A stretch of DNA of 63,293 bases, filler included, from Pelomyxa schiedti (GCA_020536535.1; 3 parts of 3 records of this genome joined end to end with filler, not necessarily neighbours in it); one strand, 5' to 3'; counted from the first letter of the whole stretch, positions 32,915-41,820 are shown. The notes: a model not told the origin generated them from the letters alone. A program made the numbers and translations.

Positions 32915-34967
32915 ATGGTAGATCTGCTTAAAGAGGGTTCAAAGCATTTCTCGGGGCTCGAGGAGGCCATTTTGCGTAACTGCGATGCCGTAAAGAAGCT
33001 GTCCCAGATCGTGAGAACGTCTCTAGGTCCCAATGGTAAACCCCACTTTTCCCCCCCTTTTTTTTTGCTGGAGGCAAGATCCAAACGTGTGGGCAGGGCT
33101 TAACAAAATGGTCATCAATCACTTGGAGAAGTTATTTGTGACCAGCGATGCAGCCACCATTATCAAAGAGCTGGAAGTTGTTCACCCTGCTGCCAAGATG
33201 GTAGTAATCGCTGCCCAGCAACAAGAAACGGAGGTTTCCCCTGCTTTACCTTCCGTTTGTGTTTGGTTTACATTTGACTTTTTGTTTTCTAAGGTGGGAG
33301 ACTGCACTAATCTTGTTGTATCGTTTGCTGGTGAGCTTATGACCCAGGCTGAGAATCTCCTACGAATGGGGCTTCATCCTAGCCAAATTGTGGAAGGATA
33401 TTCCCGTGCAGGAAGAAAGGCACTCGAACTCATGGAAGAACTCACCGCACATAAAGTCGTAAATCTGGCTGATCCTGTGGAGGTGACCTTACCCTCCTTT
33501 TTTGCATATCCGAGTTCATGCTTACGGACAGGTTGCTCGATGTTTAAGAGCTACCATCCAGGCCAAACAATATGGGTACCACGATGTCATTTGCCCACTA
33601 ATTGCACGGGCATGTGTTAACATCCTCCCACGGGATCCCACACAATTCAACGTAGACAATGTCCGTGTTGCAAAAATTCTTGGTGGTGGTGTTTCAGATT
33701 CTATGATTGTAAGAGGATTTGTTATCACTCGCGAAGTTGAAGGTTTTCCGTCTTGTTATGTGATAAGGGTAACAGCCTTACAGGAACAATCAAGCACGTT
33801 AACGCAGCCAAGATAGCTGTTTTCTCTGGAGGATTTGATATTCCCAAACCTGAAACGAAAGGCACTGTACTCATTGAGAACGCTGAGCAACTTTTGAACT
33901 ACAGTCGATCAGAGGAAGAAATTCTTGAGCAGGTTGACAAACTGCTGTCCCTATTCCTCTTTTCACTCTTGAAAGGCTGTGAAAGATTTAGTGGCTGCCG
34001 GAGTTAATGTTGTTGTCTCCGGTTCGAGTGTTGGAGAACTGTCACTTCATTACCTGGAGAGATATAGAATAATGTTGGTAAAAGTACTGTCTAGGTTTGA
34101 CCTTCGCAGACTTTGCCTTGCAGTTCACGCAACCCCACTTATTTCTTTGGTATTTCTCCAGATTAAACAACTAAAATAACGTAACAAAAAAGCCACTAAC
34201 GCAGTGAAACGAAGGGAGTTCCAACACCAGATAAACTCGGAACATGCGATGTTGTCACACAAGAAGAGATTGGCAGCACAATGTGCACTATATTTAGACA
34301 GGAAGCAGACACATCCAAATTAGCCACTCTTATTGTTCGTGCTTCAACCCAGAATGTTCTCGATGACATAGAGCGCGCTGTTGGTTGTTCTTTTTTTTTT
34401 TTTCTCAAAATTGCTTGTGATTTATGAGCTTCTCCTCAAACAGATGATGGTGTAAGTGTATTCAAGCAGATGACGAAGGATGGCAGATTTGTGGCTGGTG
34501 CAGGAGCATGTGAGACTGAGCTTGCCATAAGAATCAGCTCTTGGGGTGAAACCCAGCCAGGACTTGATCAGTATGCCATCAAGAAATTTGCCGAGGTACC
34601 AGCTCCTTTTTTCTTCCTTTAAATGTGCATTAATTGACAAGGGCAGGCATTTGAGGTTGTCCCTCGAACCCTCTCTGAAAACTCTGGGCTGAACCAAACC
34701 GAGACAGTATCCAAGCTTTACGCCGCACACCAATCCGGCAAACCGCACGCAGGAGTGGACATCGAAGGGAACAACGGCGGCATCCTCCCCAACTCCGTGG
34801 AGGAAGGAGTCCTAGACCACCTAGGCAGCAAGCGACAAGCCATAGAGCTAGCCACCAACGCTGCCGTCACCATCCTACGGGTGGACCAAATCATCATGCA
34901 AAAGCAAGCCGGTGGGCCCAAGCCACCCAAACAAGGCGGTGCCATGGACGCCGGTGACGACTATTGA
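32915..34967 (+). CDS. CCT8: T-complex protein 1 subunit theta
   Basis: KHFSGLEEAILRN, RTSLGPNG.NKMVINHLEKLFVTSDAATI, FNVDNVRVAKILGG, ETKGTVLI, LRVDQIIM.KQAGGPK. Confidence 0.95.
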
Positions 34968-35230
34968 CCCCCCATCACGTGATCCTCTCATCAATGTCAG
35001 CCCCAGCAGCATTCACCATCGCACTCAGAATAAAAAAAAAGAACTTCAGTAGAATTCCATCTATTTTTTGCTGTAGTTCCACAACAACAGGAAACGCACT
35101 CCACCAAATCTCCAGCGGCTAGTAGGCGCACAAAGGCGTAAAAGCATCATGAGTGGTTGTGCCATAATGATGCGGGCTTCATTCCGTATTCTGCAAAAAA
35201 AATCATCACTCTGGATTTTTCCTGCAACGG

Positions 35231-38200
35231 ATGATACGGAAGAAACCCCAACGTAAACAACAGGTGAAGCAGCAACAGCAGAATAAAGATGGTGATGATA
35301 CAGGAACACCAATAGTAGAGAGCCACCCGTCTTCCAACACCACAACAACAATTGCAGCAGCAACAGCCAAAACGATGACAGTGGCAAGTAAACCCATAAT
35401 TGGCGAGGCGGGGGAGGCGTTGGGGTCTGTTGGGATCCGGGAGCCGGGGTTTGTTGAGGGAAGGAAGGGAATGCTGAAGGGAGTTATGGGACCAGGGGAC
35501 GTCGTGAATTTGGGGGCATCGGGAAGACCTCAGGGGTCCAAAGTGATTGGTTGCAATTCATCAATGTGAGTGAGCTCAAGTTTTCTTGTGAGAATCATTT
35601 TGTTGAGTATTTGGCATTTAACAGTGACAATGTGTTTCGTGGTATTTGATTTGGATAGTAGTACTTTTGTAAATGTTTGTTGTTATATTGTCATTCAAAG
35701 AAAACCTGAAGTGAGGGGGACACTGGGGTGAAATACATTGAACCTGCTGATGACTTTGTTCTCTTGTATGGACTTTCTCCTGGGTCTCTGAAATTGAGTT
35801 GGTGTAGCACCTGGTCAAATTTCCTTGGTTTTGAGGAACAACAAGTACTACTGGCAGTTTCTTTATGTGGCACTTATCTATTTTAAGGGAGTCCTTCGCT
35901 TTGTCTACAATACCAAATTCCTCTCCAAAAACTCTGATATCATTCCTGTTGTGCATGGGAGTCCATCACAAGAGTTGAATGTCTCATTTGAAAGTGCAGC
36001 ATTTCCAGGGACTTTTGTTTCCAATGTGACTTTGAGCAATGGCACCAATGAAGTAACCCGCGATTTGACCAGTGCTGCCAGCTTTAGTATGAACTGGAAT
36101 CAATTTACAATATCTTCTAAATCACTCCTCGGTTCACTTCTCAAGGACTGTCCCTGAGCCCCTCCCACTTCAAAGATGTTCAAGAAACCAAGTCTTTGTA
36201 TGAAGACCTAGTGAAAAGGCTTTCACAGGGTCGTGCAACTTCTGACCTACCAGAAAGTAAACTTCTTCATATCCTTGGATACCTACCTCTATCACGTTTA
36301 TTCCGTCCTGTGCATGATTTTTTGGGAGAGAACATTCCCTTCTATCTTCATGTCGACCAGAGAGAGTAGTTCCTCTCCTCTTCTGAACTCACTGAGCAAT
36401 TACGTAGACAGGAGCAGCTATTTACACAAGCACTCGATTACTTAGATATTCACGAAGGATTATCGTTTCTTCATATCGGGCTTTCACAGTGCAGAATACC
36501 TGTCATAATATCAGCTCTTTTTGGAGTATTTATTTTCTAAACTTTTACAACTGGCCAACACTCAAAAGGGCCAGCTTGATTATACTATATGGAACATTGA
36601 CAGTGCATTGGAAGACCTCACACGGTTCAGGCCAAATAAAAACTACCAAAATAATTTTTCATAGATACTTCATTGCACAAATATCTCCTGACTATGGCAT
36701 TCATAATGTGAAGCTTTATTTACAAAACTGCTTTCTGTTTGAGGCAACTCCTGTCAATCAGTTTGATCGTGTATTAATCTGTGGGCGAGCTCCACAGGCA
36801 AGGTTTCGTCAATTATGCAATCTCATAAAACCTGGTGGCCTCCTAGTGGTACATTTTTGGTTTCTAGTCATATGAAAACTGACACGAAAAAATAGGGGTG
36901 TTTTGACACGGCGGCCCAATCAAAGGTAGTATTAGTCAAGAAGGACTTCGATGGAGTCATCAGGCGGCTTGCTCTTCCTTTCGCACAAGATATAGATCCC
37001 ACTACTGCAGTTGTGCCCCTTTTAACTCCTCCAATGGTCTCTGAAGTGCAAGCAAGGGTAACTCCCCATATTTCTCATGAGTTTATAACACTGGCCAGTT
37101 TGCAAGAGTGAACGGAGATTTTTCAGATGAAGAAGGTGCATGTCTGATAAGTTCCGTTAATTTACTCCTTCACAGAGTTGAGACAATGGCTTCTATATAT
37201 TAGTGAGGCTTATGGGGTCGAGCTTCCAGATTACTCTACAAAAATTTTGAGTTCAGGATTTTCTATTTCCATCCTTAAAGAAGGTACCCTTCAAACACGT
37301 ATCTACAGCTTATGTACCACATAATTGTAGTTGGGCTCACAAACAAAGACGTAGCTAGCCTTGGTATTTTACAGTCACATTGCTCTGCCCTTAAATTTGC
37401 TATGGACAAATACCTTGAGTTCCAGAAAGCACTAAACGATGAAACAAAAAGTAAAGTGCAATCTCCGTTTTTCTCTGTTGATTTCATCTCTTAGTTACTT
37501 CCCAAGAACTTGTTGTGAAGCCGACACAAGTAAAGATTATTTTTACTCGGGTCGGGGTAGTTGAATCAGAATTTGATGCCGATGTGGACCTCGTTTTAAC
37601 TTGGAAAGATGAAACTGCCTGGAGAGAGTTTGCAGTTATACATAAAAAGGTTGAAGGAATGAATCTAAATACACTTAGGCAGAAAAGAATCTTAATACCG
37701 ATAACGATCAGCAGTCAAAACTTGTGCATATTCCCCTGGCACAGTTGCAACAACTACCAATACTGGCCTTTCCCAATTCCAAAGGCGATGTTACACTGAC
37801 AGGAGAATCTGCTTACATTATATGTCAAACTGGCATGATAGAGTACCACGTCTCATTCACTGGTACATTTTCTGAAATTATGGAGCTTCAACGGTGTCTG
37901 GTTTCCTTTTTTCCACTTCAGCTCATCTATTAAAAAGATTCCCATTTGATAGACAGGTTACCATTCAACGTCTCTACCTTTTATCTTAACCCTCAAATAG
38001 CTACTGCACTTGAACATACAACATGATAGTCGGAAGCAACCGGGTTTAACTGTCATCTGGGATCTAAAGGATTTGTTTCAAGAAAGTGTGAGAACACGGC
38101 CCGAAAAGTAAAGATAATACAGAAACTGCTGGAATAAGTGTCCTTATAGGGAAAAAAACAAGATATTGGAACTGGTTTCTGCCGATAGGGAATGGGCCAG

Positions 38201-38959
38201 GGCAGAAGCTAAAATAGACAAAGAACCTTCCAGTGCTCAAGAACCAAGAGAAATAGAACAATTTATTTTGGTTGCCCAGGCAGAGAGTGTGTGTTTAATC
38301 TGAGTTTCTGAGTTAATTTAATTTACAGGATATTCGTCATACTTTATGTGGAACATTGTCTTCATGATGTTCCTGATTGTGGTTCTCTCGTTTCTAACTT
38401 TTACTATACCTGCTGAAGATGGAGCTGGTCGCCTAGGCCTAAATCTCACACTTATGTTAACTGCAGTTGCGTACAAGGTAACTTCTGAATGTCTTTCCTA
38501 AGGCAGTTCTGACCCCCCTAGTATGTCATAGCAGGCTATCTCCCAAAAACTACTTATCTCACTTTACTGGACAAATATGTAATCATTGGCTTCATTATTC
38601 TCGCTTCAGTTATTTGTGAGAATTCAACCGCCTCTGTTGCGGAAGATGATTCTGCACCCTTCTTTGACAACATGGCAAAGTTGACTCTAATTCCGGTAGC
38701 ATCCTCATAATTATTTAGCACTGCCCATTCATGTTTTTTTCGTGTTAACACCGCTTTGAACCAGATATGGCTACTTCTTCATGTTGGAATTGTTCTAGGT
38801 TGTTCATTGGACCTCTTTAGACAAAGCTGGGATGAAGTGGAAGCCTCACAAGAAACTACGGAGCCATCAACCACACCTGGAAAACCTACAGACCCAGCCA
38901 TTCCACCCATGGCCGTTTCTGTAATAGCTGCTTTGGCAGCAAAAAAGGGCTCAAGGTAA
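35231..38959 (+). CDS. Multidomain Cys-less (Pro-loop) pentameric ligand-gated ion channel subunit: AbfB-like trefoil + PIMT/PCMTD-like fold + SAM (sterile alpha motif) + ligand-binding domain + 4 TM
   Basis: LBD EFDADVDLVLTWKD and FTGTFSEIMELQRFPFDRQ; M1 YFMWNIVFMMFLIVVLSFLTF; M2 GRLGLNLTLMLTAVAYK; M2-M3 LPKTTYLTLLDKY; upstream exons splice in frame; 5' end uncertain. Confidence 0.75.
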
Positions 38960-39062
38960 TAATATCATTACCTCCAACTGGCCCCAAAATTGTAGTGCGG
39001 TACTAGTAACAAGTTTGAAATTATCCCTTTTTGTTTTTGTGAATTTCTTTTTTGGAGGAAGC

Positions 39063-40162
39063 TCATGGCTTGAGCCCATATTCCGTGTGTATATCGTCAA
39101 TTATGCCTTAGGTGATAAGTGGACAAAAGTTGAAGTGAGGAAGGTACTTTGCATGGGAGCAAGTTGCTTCTTTTCAATAAGGTTCCACCTGCGAACAAAG
39201 AGGTAGAAGTGCTGAAAAGTTTTGATCAATTGGCCAAAACAAAAGGGGAAGAGATTATTTACCTTAAATCCTGTATTGAAGTGGGCATGAAGCTCCAGTT
39301 GCCTCAATTTCTCCAGGTGAGAATAGTACATATGGGCGTACCTAAAACCGTTACCGATATAAAATTGCAGAGGATGGCAACACTCTGAAAAGTCGGGTAA
39401 ATATTTTCTTTACAGTAGTTGGAAAGTTCTTTGGTGGAGGATCACGAATTTCTAGTGGGAAAATGGTTTGGTCATCAAGCATACCTGTAGGGATTTAGAT
39501 AGAACTTGTCAAAGAACTCTACTTGCCTTGAATCCAGTTCATAAGATTAGTTACATACTGAGAAGCAGACACTTGCTCAGGGGTTTTGCTGGAGCTGCCT
39601 TCTCCCCAAAGGTACTGTGGTACAGGCAATGAGCGGAAAGGAAAATGTTTCTGGTAGAAAAAAGTTACCTCAAAAGGACCAGCACTCATTGTGGGGCATG
39701 CAGTGGCCGTGCAAAAGTCGGAAATTGCACCAAAGAGAAGGTTCACTTGATTAAAGAAATCAATTGTATTCACTGCAAGCCAGGCGGACATAGCTGTGCT
39801 CTTCATGCCAAATGTTAGCCCAAGTATGCCCGTATGAGTGGAGGTTGTGTTGAAATAAAAGGCAATAGAGTAAATATCCATGTGTTAGGTATTCGCTCTA
39901 TCTGCAGTTAAGAAAACACACCGGGGGTACTTCAACAGCAGCCATATAATCCCCAGCATGAAGTGTGCCTAAAAACGATATTTATTTCCTATGGGGAAAA
40001 AAAAAAAAAAAAAAACGAAAAAACGAACAAAGCGAGAGGAGTAAAAGAAAAAAAAAAAAAGGGCAGCGTACTTTTTGCCCTCTTGTGAAGGGCGTGCAAC
40101 GTGGTTTCCTTCACGTACTGCTTCTTGGGTCTAAATGTGTTCCTTTGTCCTGGCCAGAACAT
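39063..40162 (-). CDS. MOB1/phocein-family kinase activator (multi-exon)
   Basis: NTFRPKK; WLAVNTIDFFNQVNLLFGAISDFCT..CPTMSAG; YVTNLMNWIQ; YAHMYYSH..HFNTGFK. Confidence 0.9.
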
Positions 40163-40339: not shown

Positions 40340-41820
40340 TCAAGAGGTGCTACCCGTTGCCTTTGTTACAGGCGTGTGGGACTTGACATCAACAGTGAGC
40401 GAGAACACTTCGGGCTTTGAGTAGTGGCCAACGGGGTCAAATTCATATCTAGCTCTGGTTATCTCTGACATGTTGAATTGTGTGACTAATATTCCTTCTT
40501 TGTCAAATAGTGGCCCGGCCAGAATTTCCCCGTGTGGGGATAGCACTACGCTTCCGCCACGGCATAGAACCGTGTCCCTGTCTGGTTCTTGTGGTGTGAC
40601 AATTATGCTGGAATTGACTGGAGTATTCGTGGTAGTGCTTGTGGGTGTGGTAGTCGAGGGTGCTGAAACCACTTTGGAAGGAAGAACTATCTGTGATTGC
40701 AAGTGTTCTGGATAGTCAGACAGTTTTACAAATTGGTTGCAGCCAATAACATAGCAGCGTCCCTCTAGTGAAATGTGCTGCATGGTTGATTGCCAAGCAT
40801 CCCGGGAATCTGCTGTGGGTGCTATATAGATATCAATTCCCTAGGTTTTTAGGTCAGGTAGTCTTTGTGAAGAACTTTCAACTGACCTGAGAATAAAGGG
40901 CCATCCTTGCAAGGGGCATATAGTTCTCCCAACAAATCAGGGAACCAATTACACCAAACGGAGTGGTGACCACATTCAATGAACTGCCATCACCATCAGC
41001 CCATATAAGCCTTTCACTACCAGTTGGCTTACCATGTTACAATTTTTATTTTCACTGTTAGAAGGTACCTTTAACTTACGGTGAACTGCTTTTAGTATAC
41101 CATCTGGCCCAAAGGTTAGTACACTGCAGTACAGTGTGCCTTTTGAGAACCTTTCTTTTTTTTTTTTGTTTTTTTAAAAAAAGAGATGTAAATTAGGAAG
41201 AAGCCAGAATATACCTGTGACCCCAATTACAAGCCAAACAGAGGATTCCAAAGCAGCTCTGCCAAGAGCTTCAGTTTCTGGTCCGGGTACAGTTATAGAG
41301 TTTCGCCAGTACTCCTGCAGCAACATAACACTCTTAGAAAGTGCTTTTTTTTTACCCTTTGATACAAATGTATTATGATGTAATTTAATAAAAGGAAAAC
41401 CTCAAAGGTAGTTTTCCCCTCAGCAGTCCTGCTCCCTTCCACATAACATTAGTCTCAACCCATTTTTTCTTTTTTTTTCAAAAAAAAAAAAAAAAAAAAG
41501 AAGAAGAAGAAGGAAGAAATAAAGGGCACACCCACAACCGCACCAAAAGATAGGCCCCTTGGGTACGCTGGTATGTACGATTCCGGAAACACCACCAATC
41601 TGTTCTTCACTGAGCTCGATCCAGATTCCGATGAACGCGCCGGCGACGACCCACCAGTGGCCTCGTCCATTTTTGCCACCGCTTCGGCCACCAACCGGCA
41701 CGCCTTGCACGTGCTCTCTGGCCCGTCGAAAACCACAGGGCACGACTGCACCACCGCGACTTGCACCCACTGGCTCTCGCCCTCGCAACTAATGGCCGGC
41801 ATTGACGGGGCCGACACCAT
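40340..41820 (-). CDS. Nitrilase (carbon-nitrogen hydrolase)
   Basis: Catalytic E-K-C context: [32 protein letters not shown]; C-terminal [10 protein letters not shown]. Confidence 0.9.

What the first reader, a model, noticed from the sequence alone, without database searches (positions are those of the whole stretch)
35231..38959. Pentameric ligand-gated ion channel fused to a beta-trefoil, a pseudo-methyltransferase and a SAM domain
Seen: GT-AG joining gives a stop-free frame from the PIMT-like region into the channel, with the trefoil-like exons directly upstream (their junctions are less certain). Segments: (i) ~35590-36120, DDFVLLYGLSPG..LSW / HGSPSQELNVSFESAAFPG / DLTSAASF, resembling AbfB/CBM42 repeats; (ii) ~36175-37057, YEDLVKRLSQG..QALDYLDIHEGLSFLHIG..NCF..QFDRVLICG..LIKPGGLLV, following the PCMTD/PIMT pattern; (iii) ~37100-37450, FSDEEELRQWL..GVELPDY..GF....L..VGLTNKDVASLGI.QSH..ALKFAM, a sterile-alpha-motif pattern; (iv) a complete pLGIC LBD plus M1-M4. 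Established: protist Pro-loop receptors exist, some with extra N-terminal domains. I do not know of this combination. Inference: a sensor channel in which the trefoil or methyltransferase fold binds a ligand and SAM mediates clustering.
Basis: partly seen in the sequence, partly recalled or inferred. Interest (0 to 1): 0.88.

Follow-up and report, generated by a model that had tools for sequence, protein, structure and literature searches.

The report
Amoeba channel with three extra domains
This gene of the anaerobic amoeba Pelomyxa schiedti really encodes a neurotransmitter-receptor-type (pentameric) ion-channel subunit preceded by a beta-trefoil, a degenerate protein-repair-methyltransferase-like domain and a SAM domain. 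I found no description of this architecture, and because there is no signal peptide the normally extracellular ligand-binding domain may face the cytosol.

Summary
Window 35231-38959 (+) is one 19-exon gene with 18 GT-AG introns, mostly 40-47 nt. Its 935-aa product is identical to GenBank KAH3743088.1, 'hypothetical protein Pelo_15506' of Pelomyxa schiedti. RNA contigs confirm eight introns.

All four domain calls survive testing:
- Channel: family profile vs ELIC, E 5.7e-24, with 303 pLGIC chains matched. It has the FPFDRQ Pro-loop without cysteines, M1-M4 and a 9' Leu.
- PIMT/PCMTD-like domain: profile vs PCMTD1, E 3e-5. The top 15 Foldseek hits are all PIMT or PCMTD1. Motif I is degenerate.
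- SAM domain: Caskin-1 SAM, E 3.5e-5; EphA SAM, TM 0.70.
- Beta-trefoil: all 50 best structural matches are trefoils, Z up to 10.

Five further P. schiedti paralogues (1050-1154 aa) have the same domain order, and the two loci I mapped share intron positions. Trinity ORFs of another Pelomyxa join SAM and channel. So the fusion is not an annotation artefact.

None of the six has a signal peptide or any hydrophobic segment before M1, and the upstream gene ends 263 nt before the ATG. All three accessory folds also occur in cytosolic proteins (SAM and PIMT almost always). The whole N-terminal part, ligand-binding domain included, therefore probably faces the cytosol. That is an inference, not shown.

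I found no paper describing this architecture. Verdict: new variant of a known kind.

The parts
35231..35565 (+). Exon 1: start codon, low-complexity N-terminus (aa 1-~88), first strands of the beta-trefoil (aa ~89-111)
   Evidence: Exact map of P0001. RNA contigs lie at 35285-35471. A template-switch-oligo tag marks an mRNA 5' end at 35343. There is no hydrophobic segment.
35712..35844 (+). Exon 2: beta-trefoil
   Evidence: AF2 model plus Foldseek and VIA: all top hits are beta-trefoils.
35888..36086 (+). Exon 3: beta-trefoil (includes the FESAAFPGTF motif, like the IL-1/IL-18 signature region)
   Evidence: (IL-18, E 0.1).
36146..36365 (+). Exon 4: end of the trefoil, N-terminal helices of the PIMT/PCMTD-like domain
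   Evidence: hhalign to E. coli Pcm is colinear from this region. The following intron, 36366-36407, is retained in one RNA contig.
36408..36525 (+). Exon 5: PIMT-like motif I region (GLSFLHIGLSQC; GxGxG degenerate)
   Evidence: (PCMTD1 9oma). The 3' joint 36525|36569 is seen in RNA.
36569..36624 (+). Exon 6: PIMT-like strand 2 (post-I position is N, in WNID)
36665..36848 (+). Exon 7: PIMT-like motifs II and III (FDRVLICGRAPQ...KPGGLLV)
   Evidence: The joint 36848|36896 is seen in RNA.
36896..37057 (+). Exon 8: C-terminal strands of the PIMT-like fold (VVPLL)
37099..37135 (+). Exon 9: linker (GDFSDEE)
   Evidence: Conserved in all six paralogues.
37176..37283 (+). Exon 10: first half of the SAM (sterile alpha motif) domain
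   Evidence: Caskin-1 SAM, E 3.5e-5; EphA1/2 SAM, TM 0.70.
37331..37450 (+). Exon 11: second half of the SAM domain and linker
   Evidence: In Pelomyxa sp. JSP transcript-derived ORFs this part is continuous with the channel.
37495..37634 (+). Exon 12: start of the channel ligand-binding domain (beta1-beta2, LTWKDETAW)
   Evidence: There is no in-frame ATG ahead of it, so it cannot start a protein of its own.
37679..37893 (+). Exon 13: ligand-binding domain
   Evidence: RNA contigs run from 37679 and 37662.
37938..37956 (+). Exon 14: 19-nt micro-exon encoding the Pro-loop FPFDRQ
   Evidence: 18 unplaced letters stand between 37892 and 37999 in two RNA contigs.
38001..38107 (+). Exon 15: ligand-binding domain
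38150..38286 (+). Exon 16: ligand-binding domain up to the pre-M1 Arg
38329..38477 (+). Exon 17: M1 and M2 (R 0', T 6', L 9')
38522..38695 (+). Exon 18: M2-M3 loop (YLPKTTYLTLLD), M3, short acidic M3-M4 loop
   Evidence: (DeCLIC, sTeLIC and GABA-A hits).
38765..38959 (+). Exon 19: M4, 45-aa C-terminal tail, stop codon at 38957-38959

Best explanation
Window 35231-38959 is one expressed gene, Pelo_15506 of Pelomyxa schiedti. It encodes a 935-aa subunit of a Cys-less, ELIC-like pentameric ligand-gated ion channel.

The order along the protein is:
- a disordered N-terminus;
- a beta-trefoil (~aa 89-225);
- a protein-L-isoaspartyl-methyltransferase (PIMT/PCMTD)-like Rossmann domain (~226-470). Its AdoMet loop is degenerate (HIGLSQC instead of GxGxG), the acid after strand 2 is N, and no 'SAP' isoaspartate motif is seen;
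- a sterile-alpha-motif domain (~482-556);
- directly after that, with no membrane segment between, the channel's ligand-binding domain (559-765), M1-M4 (768-888) and a C-terminal tail.

It is one of six paralogues with this order, so the fusion predates the duplications.

Shown: the gene structure, the expression, the four folds and the conservation of the architecture. The confidence of 0.85 refers to this part.

Inferred, at about 55-60%: there is no signal peptide or earlier hydrophobic segment, no room for a hidden 5' exon, accessory domains of kinds that occur in the cytosol, and only one Cys in the ligand-binding domain. M1 therefore probably acts as a signal anchor, and the whole N-terminal 765 residues stay cytosolic. 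The channel would then be gated or modulated from the cytosolic face of a plasma or endomembrane.

Inferred, at about 40%: the accessory domains work like the N-terminal lobes of DeCLIC, as modulators and scaffolds sitting on top of the ligand-binding ring. SAM would give self-association or clustering. The PIMT-like domain would be a non-catalytic binding module. The trefoil would be a ligand or partner binder.
For: Gene model:
- The exon query returned the identical 935-aa public protein, and it maps exactly to 19 exons.
- RNA contigs confirm eight introns and expression of exon 1, the PIMT exons and the channel exons.

Fusion:
- Six P. schiedti paralogues have the same order.
- Intron positions are shared by this gene and the two paralogue loci mapped, P0005 and P0007.
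- Trinity-derived ORFs of Pelomyxa sp. JSP join SAM and channel.
- The ligand-binding domain's frame has no ATG of its own.

Channel:
- ELIC E 5.7e-24 over LBD plus M1-M3, with 303 PDB sequences at E<=0.01.
- Pfam Neur_chan_memb and Neur_chan_LBD hit all members, above the curated cut-off in several.
- Four hydrophobic peaks.

PIMT-like domain:
- PCMTD1 (9oma) E 3.2e-5 to 6.8e-5, and nearly all other hits are PIMTs.
- hhalign vs E. coli Pcm gives E 0.005, colinear over 152 columns.
- The top 15 Foldseek hits are all PIMT or PCMTD1.
- The ten best language-model clusters are all PF01135.

SAM.

Trefoil.

Topology:
- No N-terminal hydrophobic peak in any of the six.
- The upstream TCP-1 gene ends at 34967.
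- K+R is 6 on the LBD side of the membrane against 2 on the other side.
Against: - No RNA contig bridges 37047-37661, so one transcript from the PIMT part to the channel is not directly shown in this species.
- One RNA contig retains intron 36366-36407, which carries an in-frame TAG.
- The AF2 models are mediocre (mean pLDDT 59-60, alignments of 4-6 sequences), and the Foldseek E-values are only ~1e-3.
- No Pfam family reaches E 0.1 on the N-terminal 560 residues.
- I know of no pLGIC with a cytosolic ligand-binding domain. The charge bias is modest, and no topology predictor or experiment was available.
- The ligands and the roles of the accessory domains are pure inference.
Confidence: 0.85

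Rival explanations
1. The same fused protein has the canonical pLGIC topology. The trefoil, PIMT-like, SAM and ligand-binding domains would all be extracellular or lumenal, delivered by an unrecognised targeting signal or an unannotated signal-peptide exon. The trefoil could then act as a lectin towards prey or the amoeba's prokaryotic symbionts.
For: - To my knowledge every characterised pLGIC has its ligand-binding domain outside.
- Many beta-trefoils among the matches are secreted lectins or cytokines.
- The S/T-rich N-termini of the paralogues resemble mucin-like stalks.
Against: - None of the six paralogues has a signal peptide or an early hydrophobic segment.
- Only 263 nt separate the upstream TCP-1 gene from the ATG, and a 5'-end tag lies inside exon 1.
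- SAM and PIMT/PCMTD domains are cytosolic or nuclear in known proteins (general knowledge).
- Translocating ~765 folded residues ahead of the first membrane segment would be exceptional.
Confidence: 0.3
2. Annotation artefact: two adjacent genes, a trefoil-PIMT-SAM protein and a channel, were merged by the gene predictor and by the reader.
For: - No RNA contig spans 37047-37661.
- RNA depth is higher on exons 13-19 than upstream.
- Two congener ORFs start with Met inside the SAM domain.
Against: - The channel's frame has no start codon, and no signal sequence precedes 37495.
- The intron 37451-37494 has a GTAAAG donor and a pyrimidine-rich acceptor, and it keeps the frame.
- Six loci on different contigs show the same order, and intron positions are shared in the three loci mapped.
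- Trinity ORFs of another Pelomyxa carry SAM plus channel in one reading frame.
- The 3' bias in depth is what oligo-dT single-cell libraries normally give.
Confidence: 0.05
3. It is a decaying or non-channel relic. The pLGIC-like part would no longer conduct ions, and the protein would serve only as a membrane-anchored scaffold.
For: - The M1 proline, the most conserved transmembrane position in the superfamily (PMC4795631), is replaced by M or V (alignment).
- The M3-M4 loop is very short.
- Pfam scores for this particular member are below the curated cut-offs.
Against: - The frame is open, spliced and expressed.
- The pore and gating positions are invariant in all nine family members: Pro-loop FPFD.Q, pre-M1 Arg, R 0', T 6', L 9' and the M2-M3 LP..YLT.LD motif.
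- The channel part is the best-conserved part between paralogues, at 82% against 63-65%.
Confidence: 0.05

Closest known systems
ELIC and other prokaryote-type, Cys-less pLGICs ('Pro-loop receptors'; protist Cys-less clade of Jaiteh et al. 2016, PMC4795631)
   Same: - Ligand-binding beta-sandwich plus M1-M4.
- Pro-loop FPFDxQ without the two cysteines.
- Short M3-M4 loop.
- ELIC is the best solved match, E 5.7e-24.
   Different: - About 560 extra N-terminal residues with three folded domains.
- No signal peptide.
- M1 proline absent.
- Amoebozoa are not mentioned in the text of that inventory.
DeCLIC (Desulfofustis pLGIC with an N-terminal domain; PDB 6v4a; PMC9897478, PMC12664993)
   Same: It is a pLGIC whose ligand-binding domain is preceded by extra folded domains on the same polypeptide, and these modulate the channel. 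The M2-M3/M3 exon of this gene hits it.
   Different: DeCLIC's extra lobes are periplasmic calcium-binding domains of a bacterial protein. Here the additions are a trefoil, a PIMT-like domain and a SAM domain in a eukaryote, probably cytosolic.
PCMTD1/PCMTD2 (PIMT-domain substrate adaptors of cullin-RING ligase 5; PDB 9oma; PMC12590147)
   Same: Best sequence and structure match of residues ~300-420, including GLSFL before motif I and the ...KxGGxLV motif. Both are PIMT folds used outside the classical repair enzyme.
   Different: - PCMTD1 keeps GSGTG; here the loop is degenerate.
- No Pfam family, so no SOCS box, was found on the N-terminal part. A SAM domain follows instead.
- The domain is fused to a membrane channel.
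IP3 and ryanodine receptors
   Same: They are ion channels of internal membranes with cytosolic N-terminal beta-trefoil domains that bind ligand or regulate gating. Their trefoils are among the structural matches, Z 8-9.
   Different: They belong to an unrelated tetrameric channel superfamily. This is an analogy only.
SAM domains of Caskin-1/2 and Eph receptors
   Same: Five-helix SAM fold: Caskin-1 E 3.5e-5, EphA1/EphA2 SAM TM 0.70.
   Different: Here the SAM domain sits immediately before a pLGIC ligand-binding domain. Whether it polymerises is unknown.

Membership tests
Pentameric ligand-gated ion channels (Pro-loop superfamily) | Ligand-binding domain homologous to Neur_chan_LBD, with the conserved Pro-loop proline | tested here: met
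   The family profile aligns to ELIC residues 3-261 at E 5.7e-24. FPFDRQ is invariant. Pfam Neur_chan_LBD scores 14-25 bits in all members.
Pentameric ligand-gated ion channels (Pro-loop superfamily) | Four transmembrane helices M1-M4, with pore-lining M2 (0' Arg/Lys, 9' Leu) and an M2-M3 coupling loop | tested here: met
   Hydrophobic peaks at 773-890 only. Neur_chan_memb scores 23.5 bits here and 31-35 bits in paralogues, against a cut-off of 28.1. R798, T804, L807 and LPKT.YLT.LD are invariant.
Pentameric ligand-gated ion channels (Pro-loop superfamily) | Secretory signal, so that the ligand-binding domain is extracellular | tested here: not met
   There is no N-terminal hydrophobic segment in any of the six paralogues, and the intergenic space is too short for a hidden exon. 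No dedicated signal-peptide predictor was available.
Pentameric ligand-gated ion channels (Pro-loop superfamily) | Pentameric assembly and ligand-gated conductance | not testable with these tools
   This needs expression, electrophysiology or a multimer model.
Cys-loop receptors (metazoan-type subclass) | Two cysteines 13 residues apart flanking the loop | tested here: not met
   The loop reads ...EIMELQRFPFDRQLLH..., and the ligand-binding domain has a single Cys.
PIMT / PCMTD (PF01135-type fold) | Sequence and fold similarity specific to protein-L-isoaspartyl methyltransferases | tested here: met
   PCMTD1 E 3.2e-5, and the other profile hits are PIMTs. hhalign gives E 0.005. The top 15 Foldseek hits are PIMT or PCMTD1. 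Ten of ten language-model clusters are PF01135. Pfam itself gives no hit.
PIMT / PCMTD (PF01135-type fold) | AdoMet-binding motif I (GxGxG), and the acidic residue ending strand 2 | tested here: not met
   This gene has HIGLSQC and WNID. Paralogues P0005, P0007 and P0013 keep two of three glycines (P0012 only one), and all four keep WD. The alignment is remote, so register errors of a few residues are possible.
PIMT / PCMTD (PF01135-type fold) | Isoaspartate-binding 'SAP/SQP' segment before motif I | tested here: inconclusive
   hhalign puts TISQPYMVA of E. coli Pcm opposite RE-QEQLFTQA. The motif is absent, but confidence in this stretch is low, and the AF2 model is poor there.
PCMTD subfamily | C-terminal SOCS box (elongin BC / cullin-5 binding) | tested here: not met
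   No Pfam family was found after the PIMT-like domain. A SAM domain occupies that place.
SAM (sterile alpha motif) domain | About 65-residue five-helix bundle with SAM sequence profile | tested here: met
   Caskin-1 SAM E 3.5e-5 and 2e-4, plus Caskin-2, MAP3K15 and EphA2. The model has pLDDT 71-88 here, with EphA1/2 SAM at TM 0.70 and rmsd 2.3. The top IcmE/DotG hit is a repeat artefact with no significant single stretch.
SAM (sterile alpha motif) domain | Head-to-tail polymerisation surfaces | not tested
   This needs a confident model or an experiment.
Beta-trefoil fold | Twelve-strand, threefold pseudo-symmetric barrel of about 130-150 residues | tested here: met
   VIA-align: 46 chains with Z>=8, the best being IL-1Ra at Z 10.0, rmsd 2.9, 113 aligned, spanning model residues 18-161. 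All 50 rows are trefoils. The Foldseek top 50 are all trefoils. Language-model hits are AbfB, RicinB, CDtoxinA and Fascin. Only residues 57-156 of the model are confident.
   CBM42A and an AbfB cluster are among the matches, but no better than IL-1, FGF or ricin-type trefoils. There is no Pfam hit.

The most novel reading that the evidence does not exclude
This Pelomyxa family may be the first pLGIC whose 'extracellular' ligand-binding domain faces the cytosol. It would be an inside-out pentameric channel of the plasma membrane or an internal membrane, possibly vacuolar or symbiont-containing. It would be gated by a cytosolic ligand and regulated by cytosolic-type modules: a trefoil, a pseudo-PIMT domain and a SAM domain. 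A distant metagenomic relative (P0014) also lacks a signal peptide and has a strongly basic tail on the ligand-binding side.
Probability: 0.5. Interest if true: 0.9.

Novelty: new variant of a known kind. Interest (0 to 1): 0.72.

Why it matters
pLGICs are among the best-studied receptor channels. Extra N-terminal domains are known structurally only from bacterial DeCLIC.

Here a eukaryote carries a six-gene family in which three recognisable modules are welded to the ligand-binding domain. One of them is a pseudo-enzyme derived from the protein-repair methyltransferase. That gives a natural system for asking how accessory domains control pLGIC gating.

If the topology inference is right, the family shows that the fold can work with its ligand-binding ring in the cytosol. 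That would widen what counts as a possible pLGIC ligand and location.

It also adds Archamoebae to the taxa with pLGICs. The amoeba lives with methanogen and bacterial endosymbionts (PMC10579272), so channels of internal membranes are of particular interest in it.

Tried and rejected
- **Exon-by-exon Pfam**. Only sub-threshold hints appeared: Methyltransf_31 at 0.068 and Neur_chan_memb at 0.082. The exons are too short.
- **Exon-level PDB search of the main PIMT exon.** No hit at all.
- **Word-index search with that exon.** Nothing.
- **E. coli Pcm against my own joined model, by phmmer and blastp in the sandbox.** Not significant. Only profiles showed the relationship.
- **My first junction 37649|37679 (29-nt intron).** Rejected in favour of 37634|37679 (44 nt), from the public model and typical intron size.
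- **A coding-looking frame inside intron 1 (35533-35643).** Rejected. It has no start, and the annotated junction is conserved in paralogue P0010.
- **A separate channel gene starting at ATG 37439.** It is in a different frame, and no intron of workable size can join it to the ligand-binding domain.
- **IcmE/DotG as top 'SAM' hit.** This is a repeat artefact.
- **Scans of JGI metagenome contigs and of GTDB genomes with the channel alignment.** No relatives.
- The joined protein used in those tools is the public sequence P0001, which a search returned.
Full report
**What is there.** Three-frame translation of 35000-39200 shows short coding blocks in changing frames, separated by 40-70-nt GT-AG spacers. 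I built a 19-exon model by hand.

Searching 1.84 billion representative proteins with one exon (window:37679-37891) returned a 935-aa protein, P0001, identical over that exon. P0001 is GenBank KAH3743088.1, 'hypothetical protein Pelo_15506 [Pelomyxa schiedti]', assembly GCA_020536535.1. An exact-match mapping places all 935 residues on the window in 19 exons from 35231 to 38956, followed by a stop. It equals my model except at one donor: 37634, not 37649. That change turns an implausible 29-nt intron into a typical 44-nt one.

Its trefoil segment start (~35590) lies in intron 1, and its 36131/36176 junction is really 36086|36146.

**Expression.** Contigs of three single-cell RNA libraries from the same study lie on exon 1, exons 4-8 and exons 13-19. 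They carry six spliced joints that match the model. Two contigs have 18 extra letters between 37892 and 37999, which is what the 19-nt micro-exon encoding FPFDRQ predicts.
- One contig keeps intron 36366-36407, which has an in-frame TAG, while splicing the next intron. I read this as partial intron retention.
- A template-switch-oligo sequence precedes 35343, marking at least one mRNA 5' end inside the annotated exon 1. If that is the main cap site, translation would start at Met48 (35372).
- No contig covers 37047-37661, so the junctions PIMT-like|SAM|channel are not directly seen in RNA of this species.

**Is the fusion real?** Four lines of evidence say yes.
1. The frame that encodes the first ligand-binding-domain exon has no ATG. 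The only nearby ATG (37439) is in another frame, and no intron of workable size can join it.
2. Five further P. schiedti proteins have the same order of conserved blocks: P0010, P0005, P0007, P0012 and P0013, 1050-1154 aa, on different contigs.
3. In the two paralogue loci I mapped (L002, L003), intron positions coincide with those of this gene. Examples are ...DEE|ELxQWL...KE|GL...TK|......AYK|YVI. The fused gene therefore duplicated as a unit.
4. Trinity-assembled ORFs of another species, Pelomyxa sp. JSP (EukProt EP01106; P0003, P0011), run from inside the SAM-like domain through the whole channel.

I put the merged-genes artefact at about 5%.

**The channel.** A profile of the nine family members matches 303 distinct PDB sequences at E<=0.01. 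All 60 listed are pLGICs, led by ELIC (E 5.7e-24, profile 5-258 on chain 3-261), then GABA-A beta subunits, GLIC chimeras and sTeLIC. Even a single exon (M2-M3 loop and M3) picks out DeCLIC, sTeLIC and GABA-A gamma2 at the right place. Pfam Neur_chan_memb and Neur_chan_LBD hit every P. schiedti and Pelomyxa sp. JSP member; the metagenomic P0014 hits Neur_chan_memb only.
- Invariant positions include the Pro-loop FPFD.Q, the pre-M1 Arg, R 0', T 6', L 9' and LP..YLT.LD.
- The loop has no cysteines, and the ligand-binding domain has one Cys in all.
- Unusual points: the M1 proline, called the most conserved transmembrane position by Jaiteh et al. (PMC4795631), is M or V here (alignment). The M3-M4 loop is about 25 acidic residues. 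The -1' residue differs between paralogues: G here, D in four others, S in the JSP ORFs.

**The PIMT/PCMTD-like domain (~aa 226-470).** Single exons and pairwise comparison with E. coli Pcm show nothing significant. Profiles do.
- The 4- and 6-paralogue profiles hit human PCMTD1 (9oma) at E 6.8e-5 and 3.2e-5. Every other hit at E<=1 is a PIMT (1vbf, 1jg1, 2yxe), apart from one weak transporter hit in the 4-sequence search.
- hhalign against E. coli Pcm gives E 0.005, colinear over 152 columns.
- The AF2 model is poor in the N-terminal half (mean pLDDT 59.6). Even so, its 15 best Foldseek matches are all PIMTs or PCMTD1, with probability 0.98-1.00.
- The ten nearest language-model clusters all carry PF01135 (a lead only).
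- In the alignments the AdoMet loop GxGxG reads G-L-S-Q-C in this gene. The residue ending strand 2 is N (WNID).
- Three paralogues keep two of three glycines (VGTGK or LGCGQ); P0012 has VSIGK. All four keep Asp, as WDID or WDTS.
- The 'SAP/SQP' isoaspartate segment is not recognisable.

So 'pseudo-methyltransferase' is a fair description for this gene. The paralogues may differ.

**The SAM domain (~aa 482-556).** The six-sequence profile hits the Caskin-1 SAM domains (E 3.5e-5, 2e-4, 5e-3), then Caskin-2, MAP3K15 and EphA2 SAM. The higher-ranked IcmE/DotG hit comes from summed weak repeat matches. The model is confident here (pLDDT 71-88) and superposes on EphA1/EphA2 SAM at TM 0.70, rmsd 2.3 A.

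**The beta-trefoil (~aa 89-225).**
- Profile search gives only a hint: IL-18 at E 0.1, over the ...FES..FPG.F... stretch.
- The AF2 model is confident for residues 57-156 only.
- All 50 best Foldseek matches are trefoils: IL-1 family, FGFs, CBM42A, IP3R, Symfoil (E 1e-3 to 2e-2).
- An independent all-against-all alignment gives 46 chains with Z>=8. All 50 listed are trefoils, the best being IL-1Ra at Z 10.0, 113 residues, rmsd 2.9, spanning model residues 18-161.
- Language-model neighbours are AbfB, RicinB, CDtoxinA and Fascin clusters.

The fold is supported. The particular trefoil family is not resolved.

**Topology and mechanism (inference).**
- Hydropathy finds M1-M4 and nothing earlier in this protein and four paralogues; P0010 has one further weak peak (1.71, at ~431, inside its PIMT-like domain), not a terminal signal sequence. 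The N-termini are polar and low in complexity.
- The upstream TCP-1 chaperonin gene ends at 34967. That leaves 263 nt, with no room for a signal-peptide exon.
- SAM and PIMT/PCMTD domains are cytosolic in known proteins, and several trefoils are too (fascin, IP3R/RyR).
- The ligand-binding domain cannot form a disulfide.
- Near the membrane, K+R is 6 on the ligand-binding side (pre-M1, M2-M3, post-M4) against 2 on the other side. This is a modest positive-inside signal.

Taken together, I think it more likely than not (about 55-60%) that the whole N-terminal part, ligand-binding domain included, is cytosolic. I know of no precedent, so this needs an experiment.

By analogy with DeCLIC, whose N-terminal lobes modulate gating (PMC9897478, PMC12664993), the accessory domains are best guessed to be regulators or scaffolds. 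The five SAM domains per channel are an obvious means of self-association.

**Distribution and novelty.**
- Outside Pelomyxa I found only one distant relative. P0014 is 516 aa, from an ENA metagenome contig, 33% identical. It also lacks a signal peptide and has a different 170-aa N-terminal extension.
- Pattern scans of JGI metagenomes and GTDB genomes found nothing.
- The P. schiedti genome paper does not mention ion channels.
- The pLGIC inventory of 2016 does not mention Amoebozoa.
- Full-text searches for pLGIC with protist N-terminal domains, with Amoebozoa or with SAM domains found nothing relevant.

The proteins sit in GenBank as 'hypothetical' or with automatic 'GABA/acetylcholine receptor subunit' names. 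I rate this a new variant of a known kind.

**Method note.** I did not give my own joined model to any search or fold tool. It was used only inside scripts, for hydropathy and a local comparison with E. coli Pcm. All database, profile and structure work used exon references or the public proteins returned by searches.

Noticed in passing
window 37938-37956: The Pro-loop motif FPFDRQ sits on a 19-nt micro-exon flanked by two 44-nt introns. In paralogues P0005 and P0007 the same residues end a longer exon, so this gene seems to have gained (or they lost) the upstream intron.
   Followed up: partly
window 36366-36407: This 42-nt intron carries an in-frame TAG. It is retained in one RNA contig that splices the next intron correctly, which suggests partial intron retention.
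   Followed up: no
window 35343: A Smart-seq template-switch-oligo tail (...GCAGAGTACATGGG) precedes this base in an RNA contig, marking an mRNA 5' end inside the annotated CDS. Another contig reaches 35285. The true start codon may be Met48 (35372) rather than 35231.
   Followed up: partly
window 35533-35643: A stop-free stretch in another frame, overlapping the end of exon 1 and intron 1, reads like coding sequence (...WLQFINVSELKFSCENHFVEYLAFNSDNVFRG). It has no start, and the annotated splice skips it.
   Followed up: partly
P0001 aa 797 and equivalents (window ~38425): The pore -1' residue differs between paralogues: G or S in some, D in P0005, P0007, P0012 and P0013. Different ion selectivities within the family are possible.
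   Followed up: no
P0001 aa ~320-345 and paralogues: In the PIMT-like domain, loss of the glycine loop mostly goes with loss of the strand-2 acid. This gene and P0010 have G-L-S/A-Q-C/G with WNID. The other four keep WD, and three of them keep G-x-G. Some paralogues may still bind a nucleotide cofactor.
   Followed up: partly
window 38890-38956 (P0001 aa 914-935): The C-terminal tail ends in a short hydrophobic stretch followed by KKGSR. It is conserved in P0010 and partly in the Pelomyxa sp. JSP ORF. It is too short for a standard membrane helix, and its role is unknown.
   Followed up: no
L004:400-1950 (P0014): An ENA metagenome contig encodes a 516-aa Cys-less pLGIC (ELQRFPFDVQ) without introns and without a signal peptide. 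It has an unrelated 170-aa N-terminal extension and a very basic tail after M4. It may belong to a wider group of signal-less pLGICs.
   Followed up: partly
window 33753-34967 (+) and 40340-40783 (-): The neighbours are a TCP-1/CCT chaperonin gene ending at 34967 (Cpn60_TCP1, E 1e-10) and a carbon-nitrogen hydrolase exon on the minus strand (E 3e-8).
   Followed up: partly
window 39000-39050: Other RNA contigs begin right after this gene's 3' end (about 39008-39012), so the next transcription unit is very close.
   Followed up: no
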